The position numbers and the translations under genes are program-made. Below are positions 1 through 27,442 of a stretch of DNA of 64,000 nt, one piece after another (the stretch's first letter is position 1; every line of letters begins with the position of its first letter). The notes below the pieces were generated by a model that worked only from the letters and a program-made list of their open reading frames with translations, was not told where the DNA came from and did not search any database. Source of the stretch: Anthoceros angustus (lineage: Eukaryota; Plantae; Anthocerotophyta); contig VJWM01000135.1 in assembly GCA_010909165.1 (NCBI GenBank), positions 496,001 through 560,000 of the forward strand, read 5' to 3'.

Positions 1-1560
1 CTCGTTCGATCTTGGCGCTCCCGCGTCCAGTATAGCGGATGCGAGCGAAGTTCCGTTTAAATCGTAGATGACCACAGGGCTGGTCTCGTCCACTCCGTCC
101 ACACGCAAACCCAACTCGCGGACATATGAGTACCGGGCATGGCAAAGTTCACCACTTGCAACCGGCATTACGAGGCATGACAATGACCCGAACCACCGGC
201 ATTGTCAAACACATTGCGATCCGCGGATTGTGCGTGTTCACTTACCATCGAGTCTTCCGATTGTTGTCGGTGGCGCGCTCCCTCGCCCCGTTCGCAACCC
301 ATCCGTCTCGCCGTGTCGTCGGCGTGGCGCCTCCTCTCCCTCCTCGGTTTCGTTCTCCTCCACTCTCACGGGCGCCCCCGGCTCCTTCCCGGCGGAGCCG
401 CTTGCCCCACCATCCTCATACGCCTCGTCCCCACCTCCTCCGCCCCCACCTCCTCCGCCCCAGGCACGTCACGAGAAGGAGGCGCAAGGGATGCTGGTCC
501 TCCGTCACGGCATGCGCCTCTGTTTGCACCCTCGCCTTGGCGCAACCACATGGGTTGCGATCCTTGGCCGCCTTGCGGCCGTTGGTGGGGCAAGGCGAGT
601 CCTGCGGCGGCTCGAGCTGCGACCCTCGGGTTGCGCACCTTCTCCACCACTTCAAGAAGGAGGCGATGGCGCCCGTCATGGCGGCGTCGATTACCGCATT
701 GGACTTGGGTTGCTACCATACTCGGAGCTCCATTGGGTGGATGCCCTGATTTGCGGCCTTGGGCGGTGGCCCCTCCCAGTGCTGGCCCCATTCACGCCTC
801 TCGGCGAAGCAGGGTTCGCCCCTCGGCACTCTCGCCTTGCATCTTGGCCTTCGCCCACGCCCGCCCGCTAGGTCTGCCGCCCCTGTTGGCTGCACCCTCT
901 TCCTCTTCGGGTGCCCGGCGCCTCGAGCTCAGCGATGAGCTCGGCCAGCTCTTCTTGCCTCCTCCGCTCGACCCGCGCCCGGTCTCGTTCGATCTTGGCG
1001 GCGCTCCGTCGTTAGCGGATGCGAGCGAAGTTCCGTTTCGTAGATGACCTGTAGAGCTGGTCTCGTCCACTCCGTCCACACCGCAAACCCAACTCGCGGA
1101 CATATGAGTACGGGCATGGCAAAGTTCACCACTTGCAACCGCATTACGAGGCATGACAATGAGCCCGAACCCACCGGCATTGTCAAACACATTGCGATCC
1201 GGCCATTGTGCGTGTCACCCGAGTCTTCCGATTGTTGTCCGCACGCTCCCTCGCCCCGTTCGCAACCCATCCACGTCTCCGTCTGTGGCGCCTCCTCTCC
1301 CTCCTCGGTTTCGTTCTCCTCCTCTCCCGGCGCCCCCGGGCTCCTTCCCGGCACAGGCGCTTGCCCCACCATCCTCACGCCTCCGTCCCCACCTCCTCCG
1401 CCCGCCCCAGGCACGTCCACGAAGGCGCAAGGGATGCTGGTCCTCCGTCACGGCATGCGCCTGTGTTGCACCCTCCGCCTTGGCGCAACCACATGGGTTG
1501 CGATCCTTGGCCGCCTTGCGGCCGTTGGTGGGGCAAAGGCGAGTCGGCTGCGAGCGGCTC
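1..1560. repeat. Tandem duplication, ~985 bp period
   Basis: 1-~600 recurs at 985-~1560 (CTCGTTCGATCTTGGC...), differing mainly by small indels. Confidence 0.9.
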
Positions 1561-2599
1561 GAAAAGCCGCTGACCCTCGGCGCATGCGGCCGAGCCATCC
1601 CCACCTGCTGCAACCATTGGCGTGCATGCGGCCGAGCCACCCTCACTGCGGCCATTGGTGGCTGCGGTCGGCCGATCCACCCCTTCCCCTACGGTGGCGG
1701 CTGCACGCTGCCGGCCGTCATCCTCCACTGCGGCCCTGCGGGCGCATGCGGCAACCCGGCCTGGCTGCGGCCTCGGTGTCGCCTTCAAGCCCCTCATCTG
1801 CGGTCCGGGACTTCGCAGCATGCAATCGCCCCTCACGCCCTCCGGGTTTGGGCGGGCAGCGCCATCCGCTGCCGGACCCTTTGTGGGGCTGCAAGCGAGA
1901 CCTCCGGCCACGGCGCTTGTTGGGCGCCCCAGGTGGCACGCCACAGGCTGCGGAGGGCTCCACCAAAGCGGCATCGGGATGCCCGCCTCACCGGCATCGC
2001 AACCGGTGACCGAGCCTCACTTTCTGCATGCTCGTCCCTGGGGCTCTTCAAGCATTACTGGCCTCATGTGGGGCTGCGGCCTCCGCCCGCCGCCGCCGCC
2101 GCCGCCGCGCCGGGCGAGCGATCCCGCCGCCGCCCGCGCATCGGCCATTTCTCATCGTCGCCATCAGCGTCGGCCTCCCGATGCCCCGGCCGCCATGCCT
2201 TCGGTCGCCTCCCTCCTCGTCCCGGCGACATGGGTGTGTCGAGCTCCATGTCTTCCACCTCGCCGCGCCGCCCATCGCAACGCCTATGCTCGTGAGCTTC
2301 CACTTTGAAAAGTGGCACTTGGAGTTCTTGGTGAAGGCTGCAACAAGCGAAGAAAGCTCTGTTCAGCACGGTGGCATTTGGCACCCCAATGCATCACCGT
2401 TGCCACCGGTAGCGGCTGTTTTGGCGCTTCGCGCCAAGCTGCACTGCTGACTATTCGATTTCAACACCACGGCTTGCATGCGCATGTTGCCGCTGCTTTC
2501 GATTGCATGCGGTTCCAACCTTCTAAGCGCTTACGGCTTGCTTGGAGTCCGGACAGTCGTTGACCGCTAGTCAACCTACCACTTCCCGGCCTTTTCCGA

Positions 2600-4600
2600 T
2601 GTGTTCCTGCCATCTATCCATGGCATCTATACGGTACTTGCCTTTCCCTGCATTGCCTGCCTATAAATAGGAAGAAAAGTCCTTCGCATTTGGACCAATG
2701 TCACATGTGCATTGCCTATGGATGGCATCCACATGGTATGTATGCATGATGGCTGGTTGTCATGTGATGCATCGAACATTTGTACCTAGATCTTTGTGCC
2801 ATGGCACAATCCATGTATGTGCACCGTCATGCATGTCGGGAAGGGTACCATGCCATATAAAGGTCACGTGCGATATAGAGAATACATAAAAATCAAAACC
2901 CAAGGAAAAGGTGCCCATGACACAGCATCTAGGTAGACATGGTCACATGCATCACATGTCAACCAGCCATCATGCATACATACCATGTGCATGTGCATTG
3001 TGATATATGTTCGGCACGGTACTCTGACACATACATACGTCAACGAATCTATATAGAAAATACCTAAAAATCAAAACCCAAGGAAAAGGTGCACATGGAA
3101 AGCACATGGTATGCATGCATGCAGGATGGATGGTTGACATGTGAAGAATGTGAACAATTATACCTAGATGCTGTCATGGGCACCTTTTCCATCTATGTGC
3201 ATCGTGATGCATGTTCGGCGGTACTATGACACATATATAGGTCGGCGCATCTATATTCAAACTACGTAAACACCATAACCCAAGGAAAAGGGCGTCGTTC
3301 TTGATTGCATGAATATCAATTGTTCAAGGCCAAGGACAAGTGGGATTACAAATATACCTAGCGCCTACCATCGGTGAGGTGGCACTCCATCAACGTTCCG
3401 GTTTTGCCTATATATGTGGGCTACCCAACCATGGACTCCCAACTACACGCTACTTGCCTATCCCTGCCCTACCTGCCTATATATAGGAAGAAACGTCCTT
3501 GGCCTTTGGACCAGTGTCACATGTGCATTGCCGATGGATGGCATGCACATGGTATGTATGCATGATGGAAGGTTGACATGTGGTGTATGTGAACATGTCG
3601 ACCTAGATGCTGTGTCATGGCACAATCAACCTATGTGCATCGCGATGTTTGTAAGGGCATCTCGACACATATATAGGTCACCGCACCTATATAGAAAATA
3701 CGAAAATCATAAACCAAGGAAAAGGGCTAGTAGGTTGTTAAGTGCATAAATATCATTTGTTCAAAGGCCAAGGAGAAGTAGGACTCTAAATAGATAGTGC
3801 CTACCATCGTGTGAGGTGGTGCTTCATCGAGAGTCCCGGTGGTTTTGCCTATATATGTGGGCTACCCAACCTATGATTCTTCGATTGTACATGTTTGTCA
3901 TAAAGGATAGGCAGCCATACTTAGTCCCTTCTTTTCTCTTTTCCCTCTTCTCACCTTTGGGAACCGCATTGTCTAGTGGGAGCGTCGGTTCGCTTGTTGT
4001 CTTTGTCGCAATGGTACCTATGCCGCATGCTCCGACTAAGAATCGCATGGTCGCATACTTGGTTTCATTTGGTGATTCTCGGTTTGGTCCAAAGGCCAAG
4101 GTCTTCCTTCCCTTCATTGATTGACATATTGGTGCAAAGGCCAAGGAGTTTTGTTCCCTTCATTGCCAATGTGAAAGCTCCAAAGGCCAATGAGTATTTT
4201 TCCTTTCATGACGGTCAGGATGGTCCAAAGGGGAAGGACTTGTCTTATATATATAGGCGGGGAGGCGGGATAGGCAAGTACCGTGTTGGTTGGGAAATCG
4301 ATTTTCTACCTACACATGAATCGGACCTTACCTTCGGACCATTCGTCAATCCAGGATTACATTTTAGTCCTTGGCATTTGGACGACAACCAGATAATATC
4401 ATGTCCGAAACTAGTCCTCGGCCTATGGCCCAATGACGAAAACAACATGTTGTTTTCGTCATTGGACCATTAATCCGAGTACATTTTAGTCCTTGGCCTT
4501 TGGGCGTCAACGAGAAATATCATGTCATGAGTCCTCGGCCTATGGCCAGCGAAAACAACATGATGTTGTTTTCGTCATTGGGCCATCGGAACTGACATAA
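2600..4600. repeat. CATG-rich non-coding repeat module
   Basis: Recurrent CACATGGTATGTATGCATGATGG, AAACCCAAGGAAAAGG and AAGGCCAAGG subunits. Inverted homologues lie at 12.3-14.8 kb. Confidence 0.85.
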
Positions 4601-5075
4601 TCTGACAAGCGAAAACACGAAGTCGTTGTGCTTTGGACCGACCACTACAGGCGGCAAATTATTAGGCTTTGGACCGATTACAATTCTGCGGCAGTCGCCC
4701 TTCCTACCGCCATTCCACAACCACTCTTCCACTCGCGATCGCGGCCATTGCTATTATGAGCAGCGCATGCCGCCGCCACCCCATACAAGTTCACGCTATG
4801 CCTCCGGTGATTGCGGCGGCGCAATCAAAATGCACCTCCTTTGGAGGCCATTCCTGCGCCTCTCGCCTCCCTCCGTCGCCTTGCGCCCGCCCCTCCACAT
4901 TCGAAGGACCTTCCTCCCACCGCATAAGGCCGGCCGCCGACGGATGGTGTGCGGCGTGCGAGTGGGCTCACCATCGATGATGCACCAAAGCGCCTTCCCT
5001 CCGCATCCGCGACGCTGCGCTGCATCCCGTCTTCCACGCGGTCAAACTCCTCGGCGTCATGCCCGGCACCTCACC

Positions 5076-5455
5076 GGCACGGAATGCGATGGCCCATACC
5101 TCGCTTTGTCTCATCGGCGAGCACCCACCTCGGAACGCGCCGACCGCACTTCCACGTCGCACACTTCTGCGATTGTCTTCTTCGGTCGTCGCGGCTCTCG
5201 CATCCGATGTCTGACAAAACTTTGAGCTGTCCACCCCCGGATTGTCAATGACAACAACCTTGCTCGGCGGCACGGAATGCGATGGCCCATACCTCGCTTT
5301 GTCTCATCGAGCACACCCACTGAACCGCCGACCGCACTTCCACGTCGCACACTTCCTGCGATTGTCTTCTTCGGTCTGTCAGCTCGCATCCGATGTCTGC
5401 AAAAACTTTGGCTGTCCACCCTCGGATTATCGCCAATGACAACAACCTTGCTCGG
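5076..5455. repeat. Tandem duplication, ~192 bp x2
   Basis: GGCACGGAATGCGATGGCCCATACC at ~5076 and ~5268. Confidence 0.9.
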
Positions 5456-6209
5456 TGCGCACCACCCTCGCGATCGCCATGCGTGCGGTGACGCTCCATG
5501 GAAGACCTTCCGCCTCAAAACCCCCTGCACCTCTTTCCATTTGCCCATTGTGGTTGTCGGGCGGCCGCGGCCGATTGGAACCTCGGCGGGAGCACTTAGT
5601 TCGCGCCATTCGACTGGCGCCGTGCCACCGCCAACCCTACGGTTTCCGTATTATTGCGCCCGACCTTGTTTACATCCATTCTCAATTGGTGACGGAAAGC
5701 AATTCACGTCGAGGCGGCTCTCCATGGGTGCGATTGCCTCGATTTTCCGTGCCCGCCATCGCAAACCAAGTGAGTGCGGACGGGCTCAAAGTCTCTTCAC
5801 ATTAGTGCCCTCTTGTGCGGGGCGGGACAAACACAACCGAAACCACTTGCGTCTCTAATGAAACGCAGTCCGACTCGAGGCCGGCCTTTCAAGCGTTCCC
5901 ATACACGGAGTTCATGCGGATGGCTTCGTCACCCGCGTGGCCATCACGAGCTTGAGACATAGGCGGGAGGCGATGAGTGCGAGCACGTCCTCGCTGAGGC
6001 GGTGCCCAAATGCCGGAGGAACTTGCGACCACCATTGGCCTTGCTTGAGTAAACTCATCGGTGATGAAGGTGAGCAGCGCTCTATCGCCGAATGACATCT
6101 CTCGGCGATTTTCCGAACATTTCTCTAAAGCTGCAAGCGGCCTCGAATCTCACTCACTCGGGGCGCGTGCCTGCATCCATGCGTGGCGTGAAGAACTTGG
6201 TGACACTCT

Positions 6210-6365
6210 CAAGCGTGCACTCCCTAGACACTCCAACATGGCCCTCTTGTCCAGGTGCACCACATGCGGAACCCTCTCCCACCCACCGCCAAGCGTGCAC
6301 TCCCTAGACACTCCAACATGGCCCTCTTGTCCGGTGCACCACATGCGGAACCCTCTCCCACCCGC
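6210..6365. repeat. Tandem duplication, ~80 bp x2
   Basis: CAAGCGTGCACTCCCTAGACACTCCAACATGG at 6210 and 6290. Confidence 0.9.
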
Positions 6366-6949
6366 GCGTGCGGGCATCGGTGAATAAAAGCTGGTCCTGC
6401 ACCTTCTTCCGAATCGCGCCACCGCCCCGGGACATGCGAGGGCTTGGTCGGCCACATGCTTGAAAAATCCGGAGCCATGCGCCCATCGGACCAGCGATGA
6501 AATCGCAGCTGCGCTCCTCTTCGCCCGAGCCGCGTTTGATTCTTGGAGGATGGCCATCAGTGGGTGGGTTGTCAACATATCCGTCTTAAAAGCCCTCTTC
6601 AACGTCCTCTGTGCCGCATCCTTCCACTCCTTGTGCACGCCATCCTTTTGGCTCCCTAGTGCGTGCGTGTGTGGCAAATGTCATGGGACGACTCACCTCA
6701 ATGCCATTTGCGGCATGTACAGGTGGCGAAGAACATGGCACAAGGAGGCATCTGCCGTCGTCGGCGCACATTTGCATCAATTCACAAATATCTTACCATG
6801 CTGCAGGGGTCGGATGCACTCACAGGGCGATGTGGTAATGTGTAGCACCGACAGCGTTGCGTTCGAACACGCCGTCCACAAATGAGGCGACTCAGTACTT
6901 CGAGCCTCGATGCACCGTCGCGTAGGCACTTCGTCCAACCTCGTGGACT

Positions 6950-8410
6950 ACATCACCGATGTCCGTGCACAGTGCGATCTTGCACTCTAAGCGGTGGGAA
7001 AGGTCCCTCCTCCGGCGGGGGTGTCGAGCGGTTGGCACTCCATGCCCGCCTCAACTGCAATCACCAATCGTCGTGTTCGAACCCCATCGAGGCACCATGC
7101 AAATAATGGCATCGGCACTCACGGAGGTTAGGAGGTCCTCGAATCGCCGCTCCGTTCGGACGGCATCTGAGCCTTCTCGGTCACGCAAACATCGCATATG
7201 CGGCATCGTCTTTCGCGCGGAATGCCATAAGCGCGCGTCTTCTTTTCCCTCCTCGCCTGGCCTGGGCGACCCAGTCGGTGGCTGCGGTGCGATCGCACTC
7301 TAAGCGGTGGGAAAGGTCCCTCCTCCCGAAATTGTCGAGCAGTTGTTGGCACTCCATGCCCGCCTCAACTGCAATCACCACCGCGGGCAATCAACCCCAT
7401 CGAGGCACCATGCAAATAATGGCATGTCGCTCACGGAGGTTAGGAGGTCCTCGAATCGCCGCTCCGTTCGGACGGCATCTGAGCCTTCTCGGTCACCGCA
7501 AACGGCATCGCGGCATGTGCGGCATCGCGCCGCCGCCGCGGAATGCCATAAGCGCCGCGTCTGCGCCCGCCTCCGCCATCACCGATGTCCGTGCAGTGCG
7601 ATCGCACTCTAAGCGGTGGGCTGCGGTGCGGAGCATCTCCTCCTCATCCATCGCGAACCTCAAGTTGGTGCTATTCGCGTTATGCGCAACTCTTCCGTCA
7701 TGGATCGAAGGTCGGTCGTCCATATCCGCGAAGGCGGACCAGCCCGGCGGTGGAGGCGCGCTGCGTGCGAAGAACCCCTGGATGGTGGCGTGTCGAACAT
7801 TTCCAGCCGTCCATGCCTTGCACCATCGGATGCGGCGAGCCTTCGCCGAGTTCGTACTGCGCGTCTCCACAAGATGTTGCAGCCTTGCAGCGCCGCACCC
7901 GCATCGGTTTCGCGATCGCCATTCTGCCTTCTCCGCAAGTGACCCAAAATTTGAAGAACCTCCTCTGGCGATGGCCCGGATTCACCCCGGCCGCGCTCCT
8001 TCCCACCTGCGGTGGTGTGCGGAGCTCTTCCACAACTAAAAGGTCCGTTGCCATGCCGTTAGCGAGCCTCTTCCGCTCCCCGCGCGCTTCCATGAGCAGG
8101 CGTGCCGCGGCCGTCCATGCCTTGCACCATCGGATGCGGGCGAGCCTTCGCGAGTTCGTACTGCGCGTCTCCACAAGATGTTGCAGCCTTGCAAGGCGCA
8201 CCGCCGGTTTCGCGATCGCCATTCTGCCTTCTCCCGTGACCCAAAATTTGAAGAAGAACCTCCTCTCTGGCGATGGCTGCAGCCGCGCCACCTTCCCACC
8301 TGCGGTGGTGTGCGAGCTCTTCCACAACTAAAAGGTCCGTTGCCATGCCGTTAGCGAGCCTCTTCCGCTCCTGCGCGAGGCGCTTCCATGAGCAGGCGTG
8401 CCGCGCCCGT
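6950..8410. repeat. Two adjacent ~300 bp tandem duplications
   Basis: 6950-7240 recurs at 7280-7560, with a partial third copy at ~7580. 7806-8110 recurs at 8110-8410. Confidence 0.85.
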
Positions 8411-8879
8411 CCGCGCCGGGGACTTCTGCGCCCGCCTCACGTGCGGGCAGGCCCTACCCGCGCTGGCGCGCTGCGTTGGCCTGGGGAAAATTGCCTCCTC
8501 CCACATGTCCCGAGGGTCGGGTGGGATGCGTGCCTCAAGGTCGGGGATGCGGACGGTCGGCAGCGTTGTTGAACTCTCCCTCCGGGCGCGACCACGACCA
8601 CCGCGCCACGCTCTCCATCCATCGGTGACATCCACTTCTTCCTCCTCGCACCCAATCGTAAACCTCCGGCGCCGCCGCTCGCTCCCCAACCACCTCCGTG
8701 CAGAGGTGTAAATTACTGTCCGTCCCGGATGTACAGCATTTGCATCGACTGTCGGCCTCTGTGTGTTGTCTTTGCCGGGGAATTGACAGAATGTCGGATA
8801 CACGGACTTGTGTGTCGCGGCAACCCGACATCACGGACCACAAAGCGGCCGGACCAGTGCCGGAGCCTCGCACCCCTCA

Positions 8880-10600
8880 ACAATGGCGCCGCATCCCCTG
8901 AGCGTTCCATTGTCGTCGCCCCCGGCATGCGAGCACCGTAGCTCCACTGCGTGAGGTCGGCGCGGAACGAAGACAACGCCTTCTCCATCTCCCAAGTCGA
9001 CCTTGGGGCCTTGTCCAGCGGTACTTGTACCCGGACTTTGTGAGCCAGCGCCCGCCTCCGCCATCACGGTGCCCCAGCTCTTTTGCTTCTTGCGGGCCTA
9101 TACCGCAACCGTGATTCCGGAGTTGCGTGAATGGGATTGTCCCAACGGCGCCGCCGGCGGCCTCGCTCACTGCGCCGTCTCCATCCTCCCACCCGGCGCG
9201 GGCGGATTGCGTAGATGATCCGCCCACCCATTCTCCGCCATATGTGGATGGGCCACAGGGCACGTTGAACCTCCGGCGGTCAAGCGATGGCGGCTTGGGC
9301 GTGGCGGGGCCGTCATGGCGCCGATATTGGGCATCGGCGCGCCGTGAAGAGTGCGTCGCGCCGGCCGGCGCAATTACGCCCGGCTCGCGGTGCGAACGGC
9401 GGCGATGGCGGGGCGTCCGACAAGGCCGTCCATCCGTGAGGCGGGGATCGATGACCTTACATGGGGGCATATTCTTGGCGGTCATTCGTCTTCCCGTGCG
9501 TGCCGAGCAAGCGTATTGCCCACAATTTCTTCCTAAATCTGCCCGTTTGAGATGTGCACTCACGTGTCTTCCGGCGATGCCATGGTGCTGTGTGAAGACA
9601 CGCTTGCACTATACCATCGCGCCACCGCGTGTAGCGCCTCGATGTGGGGCGGAGACGGCGCTGGAAGGAGATCGATGGCGATGCACCATGCGTGCGCGCG
9701 TGTTAGTGAGTGGGTGCAGCCAAGGCTGAAATCATTGACGATATTCCTCCGTGTCCCATATCTTTGACACGGCCGCGCATGTCGGCATTGATTACGAGTG
9801 GCCGTCAGCGCTGCGTAAGTTTTGGCTCACGATATGCGGCGCTTGCATTGCGCTATGTGGCTGCAATGCTTTCAACTCCGCGCGCCCCATCTTGCGGTAG
9901 ATGCATCTGCGGCCACTCAACACCCTAATCGCGTTGCCGCGCATCGTTCCGCTCCCGCCTGGTTCTGCAGTGGACATGACACAGCCGGCGTTTGACTTTC
10001 CGCGCTCTCAGCCGCCAAACATGCCAGCTGTGGTCCCAGCGATCATGGTTCCTTCCCGCGTCACACGTGCGAAGATGCTGTACACATATGTGTCCCAATA
10101 ACATATTGGGTCCGATATGTTCCGAAATAAACTATTGGATCGGAAAGTGCGAATGATGCGCTATCAGTGCGCCGCCTCCGAGCATTGGTGTCCGGACCGC
10201 ACACCAATATCGGCGTTGTGGGAACAATTCATTGTGCCCTTGCATATTGAAATGCCCTTCGCATCTGATGTCTATGGCTGCGTTGGAGGCATGAGCAGGT
10301 CGACCACCGTGGTGGGAGGTCTTGTATTTGGAGACGGAGAAAGGCGCAGCCCGTGTGCCCGTCTGCATGGCCATTGCACAACCATCCGCTGGTCATCCTT
10401 CCTCGGCCAACATGCCTTTTAGGCATCCGCCATAATCTACGCACCATCTCGCTATGCATTAATATCCCTTCCGTAGTCGCGCCATATTCTGCGATGTGGC
10501 TCATGAAGTCCATCCCATATTGCTTGCCATAAAATCCGTGAACATGGCCCATCTTGGCAACCATCATCGCATTTTCGATGGCATGGTTGCCCTTGGCCCT
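8880..10600 (-). pseudogene. Degenerate HECT-like E3 ubiquitin ligase domain (cargo)
   Basis: Across frameshifts, in colinear order: SE(D)G.VDYGGCLKGMLAE (cf. GE.gvD.GG..reff), GWLC(A)MAMQTGTRAAPFSVSKYK (cf. G.l.glAi.ng..l..pF...YK), PTTVVDLL...DAKGIS (cf. tleDL..D..akgL), YSIFARVT...TMIAG, RKKLW(Q)YAC, RMPGATT (cf. LP.AhTC). The catalytic Cys is not clearly seen. Confidence 0.45.
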
Positions 10601-18100: not shown

Positions 18101-18910
18101 GCGGCCCAGTGGGTTGGTGTGAACTCAGTGGCGGTTGCAATTGAAGGTGGCAACGGTAGTGGTAGCTCCCATCTTGTAGATGATGGCGGAATCACGGTGC
18201 GATGCGCATGTTTGCGGTCTGTGGCAAGCGGCCGAAGGGCGGGGGTAGGAGGCGGCGGGGAGGGTGGGAGATGCAAAGCTCGGCAGTACATTCTGCGTGG
18301 CCTATGGTTCCCATCAACTATTGGGGCTGTCCGAGTTCTTGGCATTTGTGGAGGACCATCAAAGCCGTGTCTGCGCATGGAGGGCTATCGAGAGAAACTT
18401 GCCGCCCTCGACTGCCGGCGAGGCGGACGGATGGAGTGGCGGTGGACAAATTCTGCGAGAGGTCTTACCGGTGGTGGAGTGCCATATTTTCATGCACCAA
18501 GTGTTCACGGTTGGCCGCCGTCGGAATGGAAGAGGTACGGAAAGGGGAGCTGCGAGCTGGGCGACCTTAGGATTTGGTTTTCCAGTGCACGCATCAAGTG
18601 CCCGACCTTGTGGAGAGGTGGCCTATGAGGTATTATGAATTGGTTGATTTAAATGCGGTATGGAGAAATGGAATGGAATGAAGAATGGGCGTTGTTCGAG
18701 GATATCAACCGTGACGGAGAACCATGTTATGGCGTACTTGGCGAGGATCACGAGTGCGAGGCGGTGGAAGAGAACCAAGTGCCGTGAAGGCACAAAATGT
18801 AAGGGTGGTTGCGGTTGGGAATGGGAGTGATGGTGCGAGCACGGGCTTATGATGAGCGTGCAGCCGACAAGGTGAGGTTGATCGGCATGTAATTCGTTGG
18901 AACTGCGGAT
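15170..18910 (+). repeat. Three diverged copies of a ~0.9-1.2 kb coding-like unit of unknown function
   Basis: MVPINYWELSEFLAFVEDHQS..ECHIFMHQVF..LRIWFSSARIKC recurs at ~15830, 16751 and 18304. Confidence 0.85.
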
Positions 18911-21049
18911 GCGAGATGCGAGGGTTGCGGCGGGCTGCTGCGATTGCGGCCTGCCGCCGTCGATAGGTGCAGCGCCTCGAGTTGCGGATCGTTGTAAGGA
19001 GTGCGATGCGTGCGCGATGCGCATTCAATGTTCTGAAAATGCGTTGTGAAATTTGAGTATGCGGCGAGCATATCGCTGTTGCACCGCGGCGGATCGTTGT
19101 AAGGAGTGCGATGCGTGCGCGGCGATCACGCACGTTGTTACTGCGGTAGCAGCATCATCTACCGCCATCGGAAGTGCGATGACTCACATGTTGGCATATA
19201 CTGCGGCGGCGGCGTGCGCGATGGGAGGAGGCGGAGTAAAGGCGGCGTCGGTGGGGATCTCGACGATCCGAGGCGCGTGGACCTATGATTCCGTGCACAA
19301 TGAAAGCATGCCATGATGGTGCGTTGAGCGGGAGGCGGTGGAGGAGGAGGCGGCGGCAGGCGCGCAGGAAGGAGCAATCGCGAGGAAAGAGGAGGAGGGA
19401 GGTGGGAGGGCGCCATGGACATCCGTGCGTCGTCCGAGCGGAAGGTGGAGTGGCGGCTGCGGCGTTGGCGGGATCACCCGGGCGCACCACCTTGGGAGGC
19501 GTTTGGGCGTCGATCGTGCGGATGTGCACCAAGTGGAGACAAAGGAGGTCGGCTGCGCGATCGCATCTGCGTCGGTCACCCATGAATTCTCAAACCTCGC
19601 TATTGATTGCGGTGGATTGCACCAGGCGTTTTCCATTGCCCACCATGCTTGGTTACGGCTTTCCGAAGGGCGTCTGACTCGCCGCCCGCCCAGCGTACAA
19701 GCGGTGCTATGTGGCCTCACTAGAAATGTAAGCATTGCGCATCTGGGAGCCTCCAAGCCTTGTGTGTTTGCGGTGAGTATGATCCATTCGAGTTGCGGCC
19801 CGGAGAGGCGTGGGCGATGGGCGTCGTCACGCGGCGATCATGCGGCGAGGTGGATGGCGCGCCGCCGGGCCGGTAGTGGGAGAAGTGGAGGAGGAGGCGG
19901 CGGCGATCATGCGGCGGCCGACATGAGGTTGAGCGGGATGTGGGGCTTGGAGCACGGTTTTGGTATGGCCGTCCGAAGCCGTCCTCGCCGGAAGGCGCTC
20001 CATGCGAAGAGGACGGCGGATGCCGGACGGTGGCGGGAGGCCGTGGGCGGCGGTGGCTCGGAATCTCGGCGGCCGTGGGCCGGTGTGGGAGTGGGAGAGC
20101 CCGGCAAATGCACTCCACGACTCGCATGTGCGAGGCGTACAGCCTGGGGAGGCGAGAAATGTGTACGCTGGTCCGGGAAATGGGTACTCATGGTATTGGA
20201 GGTTCGGGATTGTCCATGCACAAAGATTTCATTTTGCTGTGGAGAAGGCAGTTGTGGCCCACAGAGAAGTGGGTTGGAGGTGGAGGAGGAGGGGCGCGCG
20301 GGGAAGGGAGCAATCGCGAGGAAAGAGGGAGGAGGCGAGGTGGAGGCCATGGACATCCGTTGCGATCGTCCGAGCGGAAGGTGGAGTCAAGGTGCCTCGT
20401 GGGCGGTGGCGAGATCACCGGCGCGACCACCGTGGGAGGCGTTGTGGGCGTCGATCGTGCGGATGTGCACCGGAAGTGGAGACAAAGGAGGTCGGCCCCG
20501 CGCGATCGCATCTGCGTCGGTCACCCATGAATTCTCAAACCTGTTGATTGCGGTGGATTGCACCAGGCGTTTTCCATTGCCCACGACCATGCTTGGTTAC
20601 GGCTTTCCGAAGGAGGCGTCTGACTCGCCTGGCACCAAGCGGTACAAGCGGTGCTATGTGGCCTCCCGCTGCGAAATGTAAGCATTGCGCGGTCGGCATC
20701 GTGGGAGCCTCACAAGGCTTGTGTGTTTGCAGTGAGTATGATCCATTCGATTTTGGCCACGGAGGCGTGGGCGGTGGGCGCATCGTCCTTGAGCACGGCG
20801 ATCATGCGGCGAGTGCAACCGTCCGCCGGGCCGGGGCAGTATGATGGGAGAAGTGGAGCAGGCGGCGGCGACATGCGGCAATGTTGCGGCCGACATGAGG
20901 TTGAGCGGGATGTGGGGCTTGGAGCACGGTTTTGGTATGGCCGTCCGAAGGAGCCGCCGTCCTCGCCGGAAGGCGCTCCATGCGAAGAGGGAGGAGGCGG
21001 TGGCGGGGAGGCCGTGGGCGGCGGTGGCTCGGAATCTCGGCCGGCCGTG

Positions 21050-21520
21050 GGCCGGTGTGGGAGTGGAGGCCGGCAAATGCACTCCACGGACTCATGTGCG
21101 AGGCGTACAGCCTGGGGAGGTCGAAATGTGAGTCTGTTGCTGGTCAGGAAATGGGTCCTCATGGTATTGGAGGTTGCGGATTGTCGCCATGCACAAAGAT
21201 TTCCATTTGTGGGAAGGCAGTTGTGGCCCACAGAGAAGTGGGTTGGAGGTGGGTGAAGGTGCCTCGGTGGGCGGTGTCATGCGCATGGGGCCGCGGAATC
21301 TTTGGAGCAGCAAAGAATTGGCATGGCACGTTGGTGCCGTTGTGGATGCAATTCGCGACCGATTGCAATCTGCGTGCGACCATCGAGATAGGAGCCGGTG
21401 ACCATGCTCTGTGAGAAGTCAATGGAGGCTTACGTGGGAGTTCTGATCCGAAGGACGCCTTTTCGGCAATCACCGTCGTTCGAAAGTGGAGGCGGTTGGA
21501 TGGCACCCTATGGTCGCGGT
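21050..21520 (+). pseudogene. Degenerate SET-domain-like frame (cargo), copy 1
   Basis: Cys-rich CGSG..KCTP..C..C, then EMG(P/T)HGIGG, TKISF.(GE), HVGAVVDA...DCN, FxAIT..RKVE..MAPYG, read across frameshifts. Confidence 0.35.
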
Positions 21521-22129
21521 GGAGGGAATGATAGCGATGGATGTTACGCAATCGGAGAAGTGGAGTTGGAAGCTAGTGGTGAGGCGGTTGGGCGGAATGG
21601 GACCGGCGTCACATGTGGACGGGCCGCGGCATTGGAATATGCATGAGGCTCGTTTCGGCGGTGGGACATTGAGCATCCTCCCGAGGAGTTGGATCAACAC
21701 AATTTTTGTGGGCGCGTTCATTGCCGTTAAAGTCACGGAGCATTTCATATGTTACTTGGACTTGAAGCGAGCGAAGAGGGAGTATTCCAAACCGGAAGCA
21801 TGTGACACGATCATCGGGGCATGCCACACAATGGGGGTCGCACGGGATACGCCACGATAGCTGGAAGATCCCATGCCTTTTGTTTGCAGGGCCGTCGTGG
21901 AACCCTGCGCATTGAGGTAAGGCGAGGTTACATCGTTTGCGGGTTTGCCGCGCCGGCGGCACGAAGAATGAAGGCGGGGAGCGGGCCATCGACATTTGTC
22001 GGGGTAGAACATGCATGGAGCGAGGAAGTGTGTATGCATGCGGCGAGGCGCCCATGCGAAGAGGGAGGAGGCGGTGGAGGAGGCGGTGGCGGGGAGGCCG
22101 TGGGCGGTGGCTCGGAATCTCCGACGCGG

Positions 22130-22590
22130 GAGTGTGGGAGTGGGAGAGTCGGCAAATGCACTCCACGACTCATGTGCGGAGCGCAGGCAACCGGGAGGTC
22201 GAAATGTGAGCACGCTGGTCCGGGAAATGGGTACTCATGGTATTGGAGGTTCGATTGTCCGCCATGCACAAAGATTTCATTTTCGCCTGGAGAAGATGAC
22301 AGGGCCCACGCCACCGAGAAGTGGGTTGAGAGTCAAGGTGCCTCGGTGGGCGGCCGCCATGAACGCATTAATGGAACGCGCTAAAGAATTGGCATGGCAC
22401 GTTGGTGCCGTTGTGGATGCACCAAGACCAGGATTGCAATGCACGACCATCGAGATAGGAACGCCAGTGACCATGCTCGTGAGAAGTCAATGGAGGCTTC
22501 GTGGGAGTTTACGGCCAGAGAAGGACGCCTTTTTCGCAATCACCGCTGCTCGAAAGTGGAGGAGAGCAGTTGGATGGCACCCTATGGTCG
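22130..22590 (+). pseudogene. Degenerate SET-domain-like frame, copy 2
   Basis: VREMGTHGIGG..TKISFSPGE..HVGAVVDAP..DCNA..FFAITAARKV..GEQL(M)APYG, matching the SET order GxG / I..GE / N...N / A.r.I..GEEL...YG. Confidence 0.4.
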
Positions 22591-23599
22591 CAGTGGAGGG
22601 AATGATAGCGATGGATGTCCCGCAATCGGAGAAGTGGAGTTGGAAGCTAGTGGGCGGTTGGGCGGAATGGGACCGGCGTCACATGTGCTGGACCGGGCCA
22701 CAAAGCGGCATGGAATATGCGTGAGGCTCGCTTTCTTGGGACATTGAGCATCCTCCAGTGGAGTTGGATCAACACAATTTTTGTGGGCGCCGCTCATTGC
22801 CGCTCAGGTACAACAGAGAGCATTTCATTTGTTACTTGGACTTGAAGCGAGCGAAGAGGGAGTATTCCAAACACGGAAGCATGTGACCGATCATCGTGGC
22901 ATGCCACACAATGGGGGTCGACGGATACGCCCGATAGTGGAAGATCCCATGCCTTTTGTTTGCACCGAGGACCGCCGTGGAACCGCGCATTGAGGTAAGG
23001 CGCAGTGTCGCCGTTTGCGGGTTAAGCCAAGCACAAGAATGAATTCGGGAGAGGAGGCCATCGACATTTGTCGGGGTAGAACATGTGCATGGAGCGAGTG
23101 TGTATGCAACGGCCGTGAAGCGCCCATTCTAGATTGTTCACAGACGGCGTGTGTGGTGCGTCTTGTTGGTTTGGAAGTGTTCGTGGAGTGCATGTGGCGC
23201 ACTTCAAACAATGAATCAAGCGGATACCAAAAGTGGCGTGATAGCTACGGGCGCTTTCGACGAACTTCTGCGATCTACCTCTGCGATCTGCGGTGTGCAA
23301 ACCCCGCCCCAAGCGCTTCACGGACCGTCCGTGGAACACAAATCGGAGTAATAATGCTGATCGAGTCCGCTGTCTGAAACCCTTGGCTGCGGACATGCCA
23401 TTACTCGGGCGGAAAGTGTTAGGGAGGATCGAAATCGGTATGCACGAGAGGTGCATTTGGGGTTTGAGCGGGAGGAAGGCGCATGGGCAGGAAAAAGCGC
23501 TCCATGGGAAGTAGGCGGTGAGGTGGAGGTGTTGAGGCCACCAGTCTCCACCTTGGCCATCACGTGGGGCAAAAAGCAGTGAAGGGTGCCCATGGGCCG

Positions 23600-26500
23600 G
23601 GCCGGCCTTCCGAGCGGGCGGAAGAAGGAGGAAGATGGTGGGCGGTGCGCCCGGCCAGGCTCATCAAGAGGTCATGGCGGAAGCCCATCATCATCGGACG
23701 GTGAAAACTTGAGGCAATTCTCGTGCGAGGCAGTGGGGATGAGGGCTGGAAGGTGGAGATGAAGGGATGCATAGGAGCGGCGGGGTCTTGCCCCACCGCA
23801 TAAGCTGTATGATTTGGCGGTGCGGCACTTGCAGCGGGGAGACCATTGAAAGGCCTACCAAGCGGAGCTAGGCTGCAGCTTGAGCACGGTGACGAGGCTC
23901 CTGCATCGGCACACGGCATGGCGCGGGGTGTATGGGAGGTTGTCCGTGGAGGAGGTGTGCCGCGGTGCCACGCACACACCCATCACCCGGCAGCGTGAAC
24001 GCTTAAATGCGAGGCGGGCTGGCTGGATGGAATCGAAATCCCAAGGAGGCGGTCACGGGCGCTGCGTTTGATGCGGCCGGAGCACATGGCACGGCAGTCG
24101 GCGATGCGCATCCGCGTCGATACCTGCGACACCCATGTACATGTGGCATATGGATTGTAAGTGCGTGATGCGGGGCATGCGATGTTCGCGAGTTGGCGTT
24201 GCGGGGAAGAAGTGATTGCGAGTTGTGGCGCAATCGGTGCGGTGCACATGGTTGCCTGTCGCGACTTATGACAAGATGTACCAATTCTACTTGAGTGCAT
24301 GGGGCCATAGATGGGGCAACCCATTCGTCCCACAGTTGGTCTGGAGGATAACAAGCGGGCAGCGATTTTCAACGCCTATGTGGAAGCGGTGAGGAAGTTT
24401 GGGCATCGCGGGTTCGGTCGGACTACGCGAGCACAACGATAAGCGGATATGAACGGCGAGGCCAAGGGCACATGGAAGCAACTTCATGCCCCTCTACTGT
24501 GAGTAAAAGTTTGGGAGTCTGCGTTTTCCTTATGCTGCGGTGGTGAAGTCGATGAATGCGGGATTATTGCGGAGGATTGAGCATTTGGCGGTGCGGCACT
24601 TGGCGGGAGACCATTGAAAGGCCTACCGGCGGAGCTGGGCTGCGGCTTGAGCAGTGGCGAGGCTCCACACGCCGGCTGGCATGGCAGCGGTGTATGGGAG
24701 GTTGTCCGTGGAGGAGGTGTGCCGCGATTGCCACGCACACCCACGCAGCGTGAAGGGAATACGATTCGCGGCGGGCTGGCTGGATGGAATCGAAATCCCA
24801 AGGAGGCGGTCACGGGCGCTGCGTTTGATGCGGCCGGAGCACATACGGCAGTCGGCGATGCGCATCCGCGTCGATACCTGCGACACCCATGTACATGTGG
24901 CATATGGATTGTAAGTGCGTGATGCGGGGCATGCGATGTTCGCGAGTTGGCGTTGCGGGGAAGAAGTGATTGCGAGTTGTGGCGCAATCGGTGGGTGCAC
25001 ATGGTTGCCTGTCGCGACTTATGACAAGATGTACCAATTCTACTTGAGTGCATGGGGCCATAGATGGGGCAACCCATTCGTCCCACAGTTGGTCTGGAGG
25101 ATAACAAGCGGGCAGCGATTTTCAACGCCTATGTGGAAGCGGTGAGGAAGTTTGGGCATCGCGGGTTCGGTCGGACTACGCGAGCACAACGATAAGCGGA
25201 TATGAACCGAGCGAGGCCAAGGGCACATGGAAGCAACTTCATGCCCCTCTACTGTGAGTAAAAGTTTGGGAGTCTGCGTTTTCCTTATGCTGCGGTGGTG
25301 AAGTCGATGAATGCGGGATTATTGCGGAGGATTGAGCATTTGGCGGTGCGGCACTTGGCGGGAGACCATTGAAAGGCCTACCGGCGGAGCTGGGCTGCGG
25401 CTTGAGCAGTGGCGAGGCTCCACACGCCGGCTGGCATGGCAGCGGTGTATGGGAGGTTGTCCGTGGAGGAGGTGTGCCGCGATTGCCACGCACACCCATC
25501 ACCCGGCAGCGTGAAGGGAATACGATTCGCGGCGGGCTGGCTGGATGGAATCGAAATCCCAAGGAGGCGGTCACGGGCGCTGCGTTTGATGCGGCCGGAG
25601 CACATGGCACGGCAGTCGGCAGTGCGCATCCGCCGCGTCGATGCAATCGACACCCATGTACATGTGGCATATGGATTGTAAGTGCGTGATGCGGGTCTGC
25701 GATGTTCGCAGGTTGGCGTTGCAGGGAAGAAGTGATTGCGAGATGTGGCGCAATCGGTGGGTGCATGGTTGCCTCGTCGCGACTTATGACAAGATGTACC
25801 AATTCTACTTCAGAGTCCATGGGGCCATAGATGGGGCAACCCATTACGTCCCCTGGTTGGTACTCGAGGATAACAAGCGGGGCATGGCGATTTTCAACGC
25901 CTATGTGGGCGGTGAGGAAGTTTGGGCATCGCGGATTCGGTCGGACTACGCGAGCACAACGATAGGCGAGATATGAGCCGGCGAGGCCAAGGGCACATGG
26001 AAGCAACTTCATCCAGCCCCTGTGCACAACCGGTAAAAGTTTGGTGCTTGGTCTCGTTTTCCTTATACGCAATAATTTGGTGGAATGCGGTGGGGATTAT
26101 TGCGGAGGATTGAGCATTCTGGCGGTCCTTGGAGAAGTGGGCATTCCTCTAAGGGGTACATGATGGATATGGTGAGGAGCGTGTTGGACATCACCAACCT
26201 CGGCACATCCATTCCCGCGTGACCTTCATGCCACGATGAGGCGGAGCTCGGCGTTGGAGGCGGTATGGAATAGGCCGGGTGCGGAAGATCGAGGCGGCCA
26301 GCGGAGACATTCCGGCCATGTGCACGCTATCGCATTCAAGAAGAAGGTCGACTACAAGGGTGGGTGCGACCACCCGCATATGGTGAGGAGGCGATGGCGA
26401 GGAGTTCGATGTGGGTGGCCCTCGGTATGCACAAAGCGTGGCCCCAGATGCCACCACTCGTGACATAAATTGCTTGGCGGGGTGAGCAAGCTGTGTCCAT

Positions 26501-26830
26501 TCATTTGTCTGTGGTTCTGTGGGGAGGGAGGCGCGCCAGCGCCATTTGCGAGCAGAGGCCCTCGTATGGGCCATGGGTTGTGCGAGAGCTGCGGATGGCG
26601 AGGACAATGCATATGCAAAGGATTGCGGACATGGACTTCCTCCGGACATGTATCGGTGCACATGGCACTAACAACACTCTGCGGTGCGGGGAGCACGAGG
26701 GGCGCATTGCCCGAATACCTCCACCGGTGGGCGGAGGCTGAAGCCACCCGTGGGCGTGGGGCCATCACCTGCTGCGGTCATGGTGCACGAGGTGTGAGGC
26801 GTGTGGCCCAGTTGCGGCCCCTTGGGAGTG
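23600..26830 (+). pseudogene. IS3EU-type DDE transposase (integrase-core family), intron-containing, frameshifted, central part triplicated
   Basis: Stitched translation: AELGCGLSTVTRLL..GMARVYGRLS (HTH-like), LDGIEIPRRR..ALRLMRPEHMARQSAMRIRR, TPMYMWHMD|intron|YDK..YQFY.HGAIDGATH..L.EDNKR..IFNAYVEAVRKFG..SRVRSDYAS, NFI...HN|intron|RIEHFWR, VLDITN, FMP..AEL..AVWN..VRKI. This parallels the family pattern WHxDGYDKL..IHGxIDG..G.PSRVRSD..STHNQRIERxW..WNxH. Confidence 0.8.
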
Positions 26831-27295
26831 AGCTAGGTGTGGTGGAGAAAATTGATTTGTCGCTCACCATGACACAGGAGGCGGTGACATTTTATGCGCT
26901 CACCATGACACAGGAGGCGGTGACAATTTGGATTTGTTTGTTACGGCGTTTTGAGAGTTGAGCCAGTGGTGGCTTTGTTGTGGTGCAATGTAAAATTTGG
27001 TTCTGTGAAGATGGTGTGCGCTCGCGAGGCTGTATGGCTGGCCCCTTGTGCGCCACGCCTTTGGATGGCTGCGAGCGGTAGCGTCATGCGCCCTGCGCTC
27101 GAGGCGAAGGGCTGTATGCACCTTCGCAGCCCTGTGCCTCCTCACGCTATCTCCCATCAAGCCCTGGTACGGTTCGTGATGGCAGCGCAACGGCAGGCGG
27201 ATGGGGTCATGCGAAGGATGTCCGATGGCCCATGCCCTCACCCTAAAAGCGAAAACATTGTGTGTCACACAACCAGAAAAGATTCGACACAAACA

Positions 27296-27442
27296 CCATT
27301 AGTGACGAGATCGGGACACGAGGCGGTAGCGACCGATGTCGTCAAGTGTGACGAGTTTTCCGCCGTATGCGGCCGGAAAACTTCTTTGGTCACAATGGAA
27401 AAAAACCCTAAAGGGCCCGTGTGACGAGATCGGTATTCCATA
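27296..27442 (-). repeat. Right terminal and subterminal region of the IS3EU-like element
   Basis: Ends in GGTATTCCATA. GTGACGAG(ATCGG) is repeated at ~27303, 27348 and 27421. A related terminus occurs in the opposite orientation at 38945. Confidence 0.6.

What the first reader, a model, noticed from the sequence alone, without database searches (positions are those of the whole stretch)
1..27442. Giant IS3EU-type transposon in a land plant with putative ubiquitin and chromatin cargo (HECT + SET) and repeat-expanded spacers
Seen: an IS3EU-type transposase, a TATGG terminus, a leftward gene block (HECT-like and unknown frames), a rightward block (unknown, SET-like, transposase), and spacers built from amplified short motifs. 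Known: IS3EU is described mainly from animals and fungi, with TAY..RTA ends and 6 bp TSDs. Arabidopsis VANDAL elements encode VANC anti-silencing proteins whose target motifs are amplified by tandem repeats in non-coding DNA. Inference: this is a cargo-carrying plant IS3EU lineage of more than 27 kb that may encode its own chromatin or anti-silencing tools.
Basis: partly seen in the sequence, partly recalled or inferred. Interest (0 to 1): 0.9.

Follow-up and report, generated by a model that had tools for sequence, protein, structure and literature searches.

The report
Dead GingerRoot transposon end, no cargo
This is the right-hand part of a dead copy of a jumping gene of the IS3EU/GingerRoot kind, already known from non-seed plants; its bulk is internally duplicated non-coding DNA, and the proposed ubiquitin (HECT) and chromatin (SET) passenger genes are not there.

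Summary
The right terminus is real. The sequence ...GGTATTCCATA ends at 27442, and short-read contigs of the same species carry this end next to several unrelated flanks. The transposase is a relic. It holds only the N-terminal half of an integrase-type (Pfam rva_4) transposase, in two exon pieces with the first two catalytic aspartates. All three copies of a 771-bp tandem unit share the same frameshift. The C-terminal half with the catalytic glutamate is nowhere in the window.

I found no HECT or SET. Four checks were blank: Pfam on every open frame of 80 aa or more, a HECT-like profile built from relatives, motif scans, and codon-phase tests. About 67% of 1-27442 is internal, mostly tandem, duplication, against 4% in the gene-rich remainder of the window.

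The left end is not in the window. The size of more than 27 kb and the 6-bp target duplication therefore stay untested.

IS3EU and GingerRoot are one lineage, described in mosses and clubmosses in 2019. This scan has already followed up several such copies on other DNA of this genome, some of 19-28 kb.

A distant relative of the family, in another AT-rich genome, carries a HECT C-lobe piece in 5 of 5 copies. It is probably a captured gene fragment.

Verdict: an ordinary new member of a known kind.

The parts
27419..27442 (-). Right terminus of the element. Read outward-in on the - strand it is TATGGAATACCGATCTCGTCACAC; on the + strand the element ends ...GGTATTCCATA at 27442.
   Evidence: sequence; related ends at 38945, none expected by chance; contigs of the same organism diverge exactly after 27442, and depth steps there.
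27443..27448 (.). GGGACC, the 6 bases after the end. It is a candidate copy of the target-site duplication and is untested.
   Evidence: No GGGACC+TATGG junction occurs in the window.
27302..27431 (-). Subterminal region with two exact GATCTCGTCAC motifs (27302-27312 and 27421-27431). It also holds a TTAGGG-containing stretch and a small hairpin around GCATACG. The related ends at 38945 share this layout.
26127..27442 (+). Terminal 1.3 kb that is not repeated within the window but is multi-copy in the genome.
   Evidence: no internal repeat. (many short-read contigs at 88-100% identity, summed depth 22-119 against 9 in the flank).
23812..26126 (+). A 771-bp unit in three tandem copies at about 92% identity. 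Each copy holds the N-terminal half of the transposase gene.
25647..25676 (+). Copy 3, end of a transposase exon (STPMYMWHMD, first catalytic Asp). A GTAAGT donor follows at 25678-25683. The equivalents in the other copies are at 24126-24161 and 24880-24915.
   Evidence: The same WHID|intron|YDKL junction is seen in relative L002 and in spliced Ceratodon models.
25785..25955 (+). Copy 3, next exon piece (YDKMYQFYFRVHGAIDG...RIRSDYAS, second catalytic Asp). The equivalents in copies 1 and 2 are at about 24238-24441 and 25048-25194, and each is split over three frames.
   Evidence: Pfam rva_4 E=2.3e-4 at 21.4 bits, below the cut-off of 26. Family HMM E=7.8e-20, positions 90-165 of 337. tblastn E 1e-10 to 4e-12. 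A -1 frameshift is shared by all three copies, and a compensating -2 occurs in copy 3.
19339..23098 (+). About four tandem copies of a unit of roughly 0.94-1.09 kb (82-85% identity), G-rich on the + strand, with no recognisable coding.
15167..19303 (+). Three copies of a unit of roughly 0.94 kb with spacers (84-88% identity), G-rich on the + strand, with no recognisable coding.
10867..14799 (+). AT-richer block made of tandem units of 473 bp and 1467 bp. It includes small 11-bp and 48-bp motif arrays at 11038-11106 and 13435-13532.
2624..4300 (+). Modules of about 150-440 bp that recur in inverted orientation at about 12350-14700 (75-80% identity). The modules contain a CTATAAATAGG / CCAAT stretch.
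4300..10866 (-). C-rich (+ strand) block with four local duplications (5075-5455, 6210-6363, 6972-7562, 7806-8412). It includes 8880-10600, where a HECT remnant was claimed. No protein family was detected.
1..1580 (+). 66% GC block with a 983-bp direct repeat (1-629 and 984-1580). It runs off the window's left edge.

Best explanation
The stretch is the right-hand part of a dead, non-autonomous copy of an IS3EU/GingerRoot cut-and-paste DNA transposon. The host is a non-seed land plant, probably a hornwort; the hornwort guess is my inference.

Shown:
- A genuine, multi-copy element end at 27442. It lies 386 bp downstream of the stop codon of an intact long-chain acyl-CoA synthetase gene.
- A transposase pseudogene reading towards that end. 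It keeps only the N-terminal half, with the first and second catalytic Asp. It was already frameshifted when a 771-bp piece of it was triplicated in tandem.
- An interior of which two thirds is internal, mostly tandem, duplication of long units.
- No detectable protein-coding cargo.

Inferred:
- Such a copy could only ever move if a family transposase supplied in trans bound the TATGGAATACC... ends and the GATCTCGTCAC subterminal sites, making 6-bp target duplications as in the rest of the family.
- The length comes from repeated unequal exchange or replication slippage inside the element, not from captured genes.
- The part from about 23.1 kb to 27442 certainly belongs to the element. I put the odds at about 55% that the whole gene-free, repeat-built block back to position 1 (and beyond) belongs to the same copy.
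For: Terminus and subterminal motifs.

Repeat boundary: it falls exactly at 27442, with differing flanks in other copies and a bridging contig for this locus.

Transposase homology:
- Pfam rva_4 hit.
- The nearest relatives are all rva_4 above the Pfam cut-off.
- Profile of 122 relatives: E=7.8e-20, covering positions 90-165, with weak pieces back to position 24.
- Conserved exon junction WH(I/M)D | YDK(L/M).
- Named relatives in the moss Ceratodon purpureus.

Decay:
- Frameshift shared by all three 771-bp copies.
- No HNQRIE-type block and no profile positions 166-337 anywhere in the window.

Repeat load: 67% of 1-27442 against 4% in 27443-64000.

No coding:
- Pfam on all frames of 80 aa or more.
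- No period-3 or codon-phase signal, while the flanking genes score 6-17.
- Majority consensus of the tandem units restores no long frame.

Literature: GingerRoot has 6-bp TSDs, TA..TA ends, a bryophyte and lycophyte distribution, many single-ended and non-autonomous copies, and loses its transposase when it carries extra DNA (PMC6839031). IS3EU and GingerRoot are one lineage (PMC10045372).
Against: - The left end and the TSD were not seen, so even membership rests on one end plus a half transposase.
- The three blocks (1-10.9 kb, 10.9-14.8 kb, 14.8-27.4 kb) share no sequence with each other apart from the inverted modules. They could have separate origins.
- Differences between tandem copies contain as many gap events as mismatches. 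Short-read contigs also leave 23.0-26.1 kb almost uncovered. The sequence inside the element may therefore be poorly polished. That weakens every frame-based negative and could exaggerate the decay.
- The Pfam rva_4 score of the window's own exon (21.4 bits) is below the gathering cut-off (26).
Confidence: 0.75

Rival explanations
1. Only the last 3.6-4.3 kb or so (about 23.1-27.4 kb) is a 5'-truncated GingerRoot fragment. The rest of 1-23 kb is unrelated long-monomer tandem repeat (macrosatellite-like) DNA, or other decayed repeats, that the fragment happens to abut.
For: - No left end in the window.
- Blocks with different composition and no shared sequence.
- Single-ended GingerRoot copies are common: 287 in Selaginella lepidophylla (PMC6839031).
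- Earlier notes of this scan describe many long-unit tandem arrays elsewhere in this genome that are not transposons (unchecked leads).
- The relative's elements are only 6-14% internally repeated.
Against: - The G-rich strand skew and the style of about 1-kb tandem duplication run without a break from about 14 kb to the transposase relic.
- No host gene or other transposon protein interrupts 1-27442.
- Earlier follow-ups in this genome report complete two-ended GingerRoot copies of 19.6-27.8 kb filled with the same kind of GC-rich duplicated DNA (I did not verify them).
Confidence: 0.3
2. One reading: a giant (>27 kb) autonomous or recently autonomous IS3EU element that carries HECT-type and SET-type genes as its own ubiquitin, chromatin or anti-silencing toolkit. 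In this reading the genes are currently hidden by introns and assembly errors.
For: - A distant relative of the family in another (AT-rich) genome carries a HECT C-lobe ORF inside the element in 5 of 5 copies. It scores above the Pfam cut-off, and the catalytic-Cys motif LPxTSTCAN is present in 3 of them.
- The interior here may be badly polished, which would blunt protein searches.
Against: - No HECT or SET signal by Pfam, by a profile of the element-borne HECT pieces (best E 1.3), by tblastx/tblastn with the relative's element or by motif scans.
- No codon-phase signal even in 60-nt windows, which tolerate frequent frameshifts.
- Consensus of the tandem units restores no frame.
- The transposase lacks its C-terminal half, and its frameshift is inherited by all three copies.
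- The relative's HECT piece evolves neutrally between copies (dN/dS 0.9-2.1) and covers only part of a HECT domain. That is what a captured gene fragment looks like.
Confidence: 0.04

Closest known systems
GingerRoot elements of Selaginella lepidophylla and mosses (Cerbin, Wai, VanBuren & Jiang 2019, PMC6839031)
   Same: - Terminus ending in TA.
- Integrase-related DDE transposase of the same Pfam family; the nearest named relatives are in a moss.
- Non-seed land-plant host.
- Many non-autonomous, single-ended and transposase-less copies.
- Extra internal DNA goes with loss of the transposase.
   Different: - Published copies are 3.9-12.9 kb. If the whole block belongs to one copy, this one exceeds 27 kb.
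- The bulk here is tandem duplication (67%), not captured gene fragments.
- TIR length (100-150 bp) and the 6-bp TSD could not be checked.
- The host is probably a hornwort, a group not sampled in that paper (inference).
IS3EU superfamily as defined in Repbase (TA..TA termini, 6-bp TSD; same lineage as GingerRoot with 99% bootstrap, PMC10045372)
   Same: The terminal TA (TATGG...CCATA) and an IS3/IS481-like DDE core without an HHCC zinc finger region in the preserved part.
   Different: Only D1 and D2 of the catalytic triad are preserved. No autonomous copy was seen in this window.
Gene-fragment-carrying transposons (Pack-MULEs; the 22 of 77 GingerRoots with acquired gene fragments, PMC6839031)
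   Same: This is the best model for the HECT C-lobe piece found inside the relative's elements (L001, L002, L004-L006).
   Different: No acquired gene fragment could be recognised in the window's own copy.
VANDAL21 / VANC anti-silencing system of Arabidopsis (my own knowledge; not tested here)
   Same: Only that non-coding tandem repeats occur inside a DNA transposon.
   Different: - VANDAL is a Mutator-like element.
- Its repeats are arrays of a short VANC-binding motif. Here the units are 0.19-1.5 kb, and one is a piece of the transposase gene.
- No VANC-like or other accessory protein is present.

Membership tests
IS3EU/GingerRoot DNA transposons | Termini 5'-TA...TA-3' (here TATGG...CCATA) | tested here: met
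   The right end is ...GGTATTCCATA at 27442. The same terminal 11-14 bases occur at two other ends in the window and at the ends of related elements in another genome (L001:10908, L005:12660). Only one end of this copy is available.
IS3EU/GingerRoot DNA transposons | 6-bp target-site duplication | not testable with these tools
   The left end lies outside the window. The upstream sequence could not be fetched: the flanking gene's product is not on record.
IS3EU/GingerRoot DNA transposons | Terminal inverted repeats of about 100-150 bp | tested here: inconclusive
   There is no partner end. Against the related left-type end at 38945, only the first 29 bases (90%) and a 108-base patch at 65% align.
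IS3EU/GingerRoot DNA transposons | DDE transposase with integrase-like core (Pfam rva_4) grouping with GingerRoot/IS3EU proteins | tested here: inconclusive
   Homology is clear: family profile E=7.8e-20 and nearest relatives all rva_4, some from the moss Ceratodon. D1 (WHMD) and D2 (RSDY) are present. The part with the catalytic E is absent. No phylogeny with the published GingerRoot or Repbase IS3EU proteins was possible, because those sequences were not at hand.
IS3EU/GingerRoot DNA transposons | Dispersed multi-copy element whose homology between copies stops at the terminus | tested here: met
   Contigs of a DNA run of the same organism match up to 27442 and continue into different sequences. 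Depth steps there, and one contig bridges this junction.
HECT ubiquitin ligases (PF00632) | HECT domain with C-lobe motif LPxAHTCFN and catalytic Cys | tested here: not met
   No Pfam HECT hit in any frame of 80 aa or more. The HMM of element-borne HECT pieces had a best E of 1.3. No motif was found. The caveat is possible indel noise in the sequence.
SET-domain methyltransferases (PF00856) | SET domain with NHSC and ELxF/YDY motifs | tested here: not met
   No Pfam SET hit and no motif in 1-27442.
VANC-type anti-silencing system | Element-encoded accessory protein plus tandem arrays of its short binding motif | tested here: not met
   No accessory coding sequence was found. Short-motif arrays total about 350 bp, and the terminal motif GATCTCGTCAC is not amplified inside the element.

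The most novel reading that the evidence does not exclude
A sub-lineage of IS3EU/GingerRoot transposons regularly carries a HECT-type ubiquitin-ligase C-lobe gene. It is seen inside 5 of 5 copies in a moss-like AT-rich relative genome, and 3 of these copies keep the catalytic-Cys motif. In this reading the module is a working element-encoded factor rather than a captured fragment, and the giant copies in this genome descend from such an element and have lost it or hide it under unpolished sequence.
Probability: 0.07. Interest if true: 0.6.

Novelty: new member of a known kind. Interest (0 to 1): 0.2.

Why it matters
As it stands, little. This is one more dead GingerRoot/IS3EU copy in a genome where this scan has already followed up several.

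Two modest points remain:
- If the whole block is one copy, these elements reach two to three times the published maximum size (12.9 kb). They would do so purely by internal tandem duplication, including duplication of a piece of their own transposase gene. That is a useful caution for transposon annotation and for claims of 'giant cargo-carrying' elements.
- The HECT piece inside related elements of another genome is a concrete, checkable case of gene-fragment capture, or less likely of an accessory gene, in this superfamily. I found no paper that mentions it.

Tried and rejected
1. Left end in the window. I searched with the 24-mer and 14-mer terminus, with the terminal 300 bases at word size 7, and for the expected GGGACC+TATGG junction. 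I found only two solo left-type ends at 38945 and 39712, which face away from this element. The GGAACCTATGG matches at 16396 and 17311 are at chance level and lack the subterminal motifs.

2. A right end for the 38945/39712 ends. The candidate at 41146-41159 does not align beyond chance.

3. Palindromic origin of the two skewed halves. No similarity exists between 1-10860 and 14800-27442 on either strand.

4. An older GingerRoot end in the 125 bases right of 27442. This was suggested by a relative species' contig that reads ...CACGGTATTTCCTAG there. Alignment scores were within the range of shuffles.

5. Fetching the upstream sequence through the flanking gene. The product is not on record.

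6. The whole-library protein search with the exon gave only short fragments (E 1.5e-4 to 1e-3) and low-complexity hits. Full-length relatives were not obtained, so no tree against published GingerRoot proteins could be made.

7. Selection on the relative's HECT piece. dN/dS between copies is about 1, which is uninformative about a master copy.

8. Rfam and tRNA scans of the window were blank.

9. Look-ups of earlier findings by sequence were blank, which means nothing.

10. Majority consensus of the tandem units. This was made only inside a script, and only statistics were printed. It restored no reading frame and no extra transposase or HECT match.

The spliced transposase model was searched exon by exon by reference. 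The joined protein was never built or searched.


Full report
WHAT IS IN THE SEQUENCE

The window falls into two very different halves. From 27443 onward it is ordinary gene-rich DNA:
- an uninterrupted 660-codon long-chain acyl-CoA synthetase (LACS4-like) gene on the minus strand at 27831-29810;
- a topoisomerase I gene starting near 34161;
- a GT34 glycosyltransferase at 45561-47470;
- a DJC28-type gene at 47974-48504.

All of these give strong period-3 signals. The LACS protein is 61-67% identical to land-plant LACS4 proteins, with a lycophyte best and liverwort and moss close behind. The host is therefore a land plant from a lineage poorly represented in protein databases. I take it to be a hornwort, but that is inference.

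In contrast, 1-27442 has no period-3 signal at all. It has a strand-asymmetric composition: C-rich on the + strand up to about 12 kb and G-rich from 14 to 27 kb. It consists largely of internal repeats. 67% of its bases align to another place within it, almost all in direct orientation, against 4% for the rest of the window.

THE END OF THE ELEMENT

The sequence ...GTGTGACGAGATCGGTATTCCATA stops at 27442 and is followed by GGGACC. The motif GATCTCGTCAC occurs twice in the last 140 bases. Two more ends of the same type, TATGGAATACC..., lie at 38945 and 39712 in the opposite orientation, with a similar subterminal layout. They are solo ends of other copies.

I laid the contigs of a DNA run of the same organism on 23000-28900. 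The result shows that 27442 is a true repeat boundary:
- Several contigs match up to 27442 and then run on into mutually different sequences.
- The summed contig depth is 47-119 in the last 700 bases, against about 9 in the flank.
- A 71-base contig bridges the junction of this very locus.

The observation of a TATGG-type terminus is therefore confirmed.

THE TRANSPOSASE

I put all 178 stop-to-stop frames of 80 aa or more in 1-27500 through Pfam. Exactly one gave a relevant hit: window:25590-25973:+ matches the integrase core family rva_4 (PF24764) at E=2.3e-4 and 21.4 bits, below the curated cut-off of 26.

A search of 1.84 billion representative proteins with this frame returned short fragments at E 1.5e-4 to 1e-3. 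These fragments are themselves clear rva_4 members. A profile search with an alignment of them returned 230 relatives, among them three proteins of the moss Ceratodon purpureus. A profile built from 122 of these relatives scores the window frame at E=7.8e-20 over profile positions 90-165 of 337, with weak pieces reaching back to position 24.

The gene has at least two exon pieces:
- One ends ...PMYMWHMD (first catalytic Asp) and is followed by GTAAGT.
- One reads YDKMYQFYFRVHGAIDG...RIRSDYAS (second catalytic Asp).

The same WH(I/M)D | YDK(L/M) junction is seen in a related element (L002) and in the spliced Ceratodon models. I searched the exons separately, by reference, and never joined them.

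Nothing in the window matches profile positions 166-337. No HNQRIE-type block, which holds the catalytic Glu, exists anywhere.

The preserved half lies inside a 771-bp unit present three times in tandem (23812-26126, about 92% identity). All three copies share a one-base loss between ...KFGH and RVRSDY. Copy 3 has a further two-base loss that puts the downstream part back in frame while garbling eight residues. Copies 1 and 2 carry further shifts. The gene was therefore already broken when the piece was triplicated.

THE PROPOSED CARGO

No HECT and no SET domain was found by any of these checks:
- Pfam on every long frame.
- Inspection of the frames in the region where a HECT remnant had been noted, 8880-10600. 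They look like translated GC-rich non-coding DNA.
- Scans for the hallmark motifs.

These negatives depend on reading frames, so I checked how trustworthy the frames are. Between tandem copies, gap events are as frequent as mismatches, for example 59 gap events against 42 mismatches and 70 against 61. Short-read contigs leave 23.0-26.1 kb almost uncovered, while they match the flank perfectly. The interior may thus be poorly polished long-read sequence, as earlier notes on this genome also suspected.

I therefore added two tests that tolerate frameshifts:
- A codon-phase heterogeneity statistic in windows of 60, 90 and 150 bases. Every part of 1-27442 sits at the null value and at the level of intergenic controls (means 5.7-7.6). 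The LACS and GT34 exons give 10.6-21.
- A majority consensus of the copies of each of the three main tandem units, made only inside a script. It restored no long frame and no extra profile match.

The cargo claim is not supported for this copy. The stated caveat is that a very decayed or badly assembled remnant cannot be excluded.

RELATIVES ELSEWHERE

The closest database relatives with usable context lie in an AT-rich (30-32% GC) eukaryote assembly, ENA ERZ25073694. Loci L001 and L002 are two 95.7% identical copies of an element that ends ...TTTTGGTATTCCATA, the same terminus as here.

About 5.5 kb downstream of the transposase exons, on the same strand and about 2.2 kb from the end, there is an ORF that matches Pfam HECT above the cut-off (E 2-5e-6). 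It continues into a C-lobe-like ...FALPxTSTCANxxSIPSYP. Here the catalytic Cys is kept in three copies, changed to Phe in L002 and lost in P0137.

Three further loci (L004-L006) share the HECT piece and, where the sequence reaches that far, the right end, but they lack the transposase. In L004 the homology stops just after the HECT piece. L006 shows that the family's body extends at least 17 kb in L002.

HECT-like sequence is element-borne in a distant relative (5 of 5 copies). However:
- It is only a partial domain.
- It evolves neutrally between copies (dN/dS 0.9-2.1).
- It has no counterpart in this window.

GingerRoot elements are known to pick up host gene fragments and to lose their transposase when they do (PMC6839031). 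That is the simplest reading. I found no paper linking HECT with IS3EU or GingerRoot. The relative's elements are only 6-14% internally repeated, so the heavy tandem amplification is a feature of this genome's copies.

HOW FAR THE ELEMENT REACHES

The left end is not in the window, and I could not fetch the upstream DNA. The part from the transposase relic to 27442 certainly belongs to the element.

For the rest I can only weigh indications.

In favour of one large copy:
- The unbroken G-rich skew and the same style of about 1-kb tandem duplication run from about 14 kb to the relic.
- No host gene or other transposon protein is present.
- Composition changes abruptly at 27442.
- Unverified earlier follow-ups in this genome report complete two-ended GingerRoot copies of 19.6-27.8 kb filled with GC-rich duplicated DNA.

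Against:
- The three blocks share no sequence.
- An AT-richer block at 10.9-14.8 kb, whose modules recur inverted at 2.6-4.3 kb, could be a separate insertion.
- Long-unit tandem arrays unrelated to transposons are common in this genome according to other notes.

I put about 55% on the whole block being one element and about 30% on a short truncated fragment next to unrelated repeats.

COMPARISON WITH WHAT IS KNOWN

IS3EU (Repbase; TA..TA ends, 6-bp TSD) and GingerRoot (Selaginella lepidophylla, mosses; 6-bp TSD, TA..TA ends, 100-150 bp TIRs, 3.9-12.9 kb, frequent gene fragments) are one lineage with 99% bootstrap support (PMC6839031, PMC10045372). A plant IS3EU lineage is therefore not new.

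The features met here are the terminal sequence, the multi-copy boundary and a homologous transposase half. The TSD and TIR length could not be tested, and the catalytic triad is incomplete.

The VANDAL/VANC analogy has no support. There is no accessory protein, the amplified units are mostly 0.19-1.5 kb rather than short binding motifs, and the terminal motif is not amplified internally.

VERDICT

This is a real but dead GingerRoot/IS3EU copy, seen from its right end. It is swollen by tandem duplication and carries no recognisable HECT or SET cargo. It is a new member of a known kind, of low interest. This scan has met the same family several times on other DNA of this genome.

Noticed in passing
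L001:8102-8693, L002:15505-16333, L004:9980-10504, L005:9905-10494, L006:9962-10494 (ENA ERZ25073694): Elements of a distant GingerRoot/IS3EU relative in an AT-rich eukaryote genome end in the same GGTATTCCATA. All five fetched copies carry a HECT C-lobe-like ORF (Pfam HECT above cut-off; LPxTSTCAN motif with the catalytic Cys in three copies). Only two of the five keep the transposase. dN/dS between copies is about 1. It is probably a captured host gene fragment. I found no paper that mentions HECT in this superfamily.
   Followed up: partly
window 27831-29810 (-): An intact LACS4-like long-chain acyl-CoA synthetase gene of 660 codons without any intron. It is 61-67% identical to land-plant LACS4. 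A contig from a run guessed to be RNA covers it without a single difference. An intronless copy of a gene that I recall, from my own knowledge, as being intron-rich in seed plants may be a retrogene or a lineage feature.
   Followed up: partly
window 38945-38968 and 39712-39725 (+): Two solo left-type GingerRoot ends (TATGGAATACC...) lie 767 bp apart in the same orientation, between the topoisomerase I and GT34 genes. They have no matching right end or TSD in the window.
   Followed up: partly
window 15167-26126 (tandem units); 23000-26150 (contig coverage): Differences between tandem copies contain as many gap events as mismatches. Short-read contigs of the same organism barely cover 23.0-26.1 kb, while they match the flank exactly. 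The interior of repeats in this assembly may be poorly polished, which affects any frame-based reading here.
   Followed up: partly
window 27569 and leftwards: Contigs of a sister species (organism B) follow the LACS locus at about 96% identity but become unlike the window left of 27569, 127 bases outside the element end. They continue for another 7.6 kb. Whether that species has an empty site could not be decided.
   Followed up: no
window 2638-2700 and inverted copies near 14420-14476: The repeated modules of the AT-richer blocks carry a CTATAAATAGG plus CCAAT stretch that looks promoter-like. The modules occur in opposite orientation on the two sides of 4.3-12.3 kb.
   Followed up: no
window 27398-27442: In a run of the same sample guessed to be RNA, a 1350-base contig of very high depth (314) contains the terminal 45 bases of a family end joined to other sequence. 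Some copy's end may lie inside an abundant transcript.
   Followed up: no
window 34161-35372, 45561-47470, 47974-48504: These are host genes to the right of the element: topoisomerase I (N-terminal DNA-binding fragment hit), a GT34 galactosyl/xylosyltransferase in two exons, and a DnaJ C28-type protein. The element borders gene-rich DNA.
   Followed up: partly
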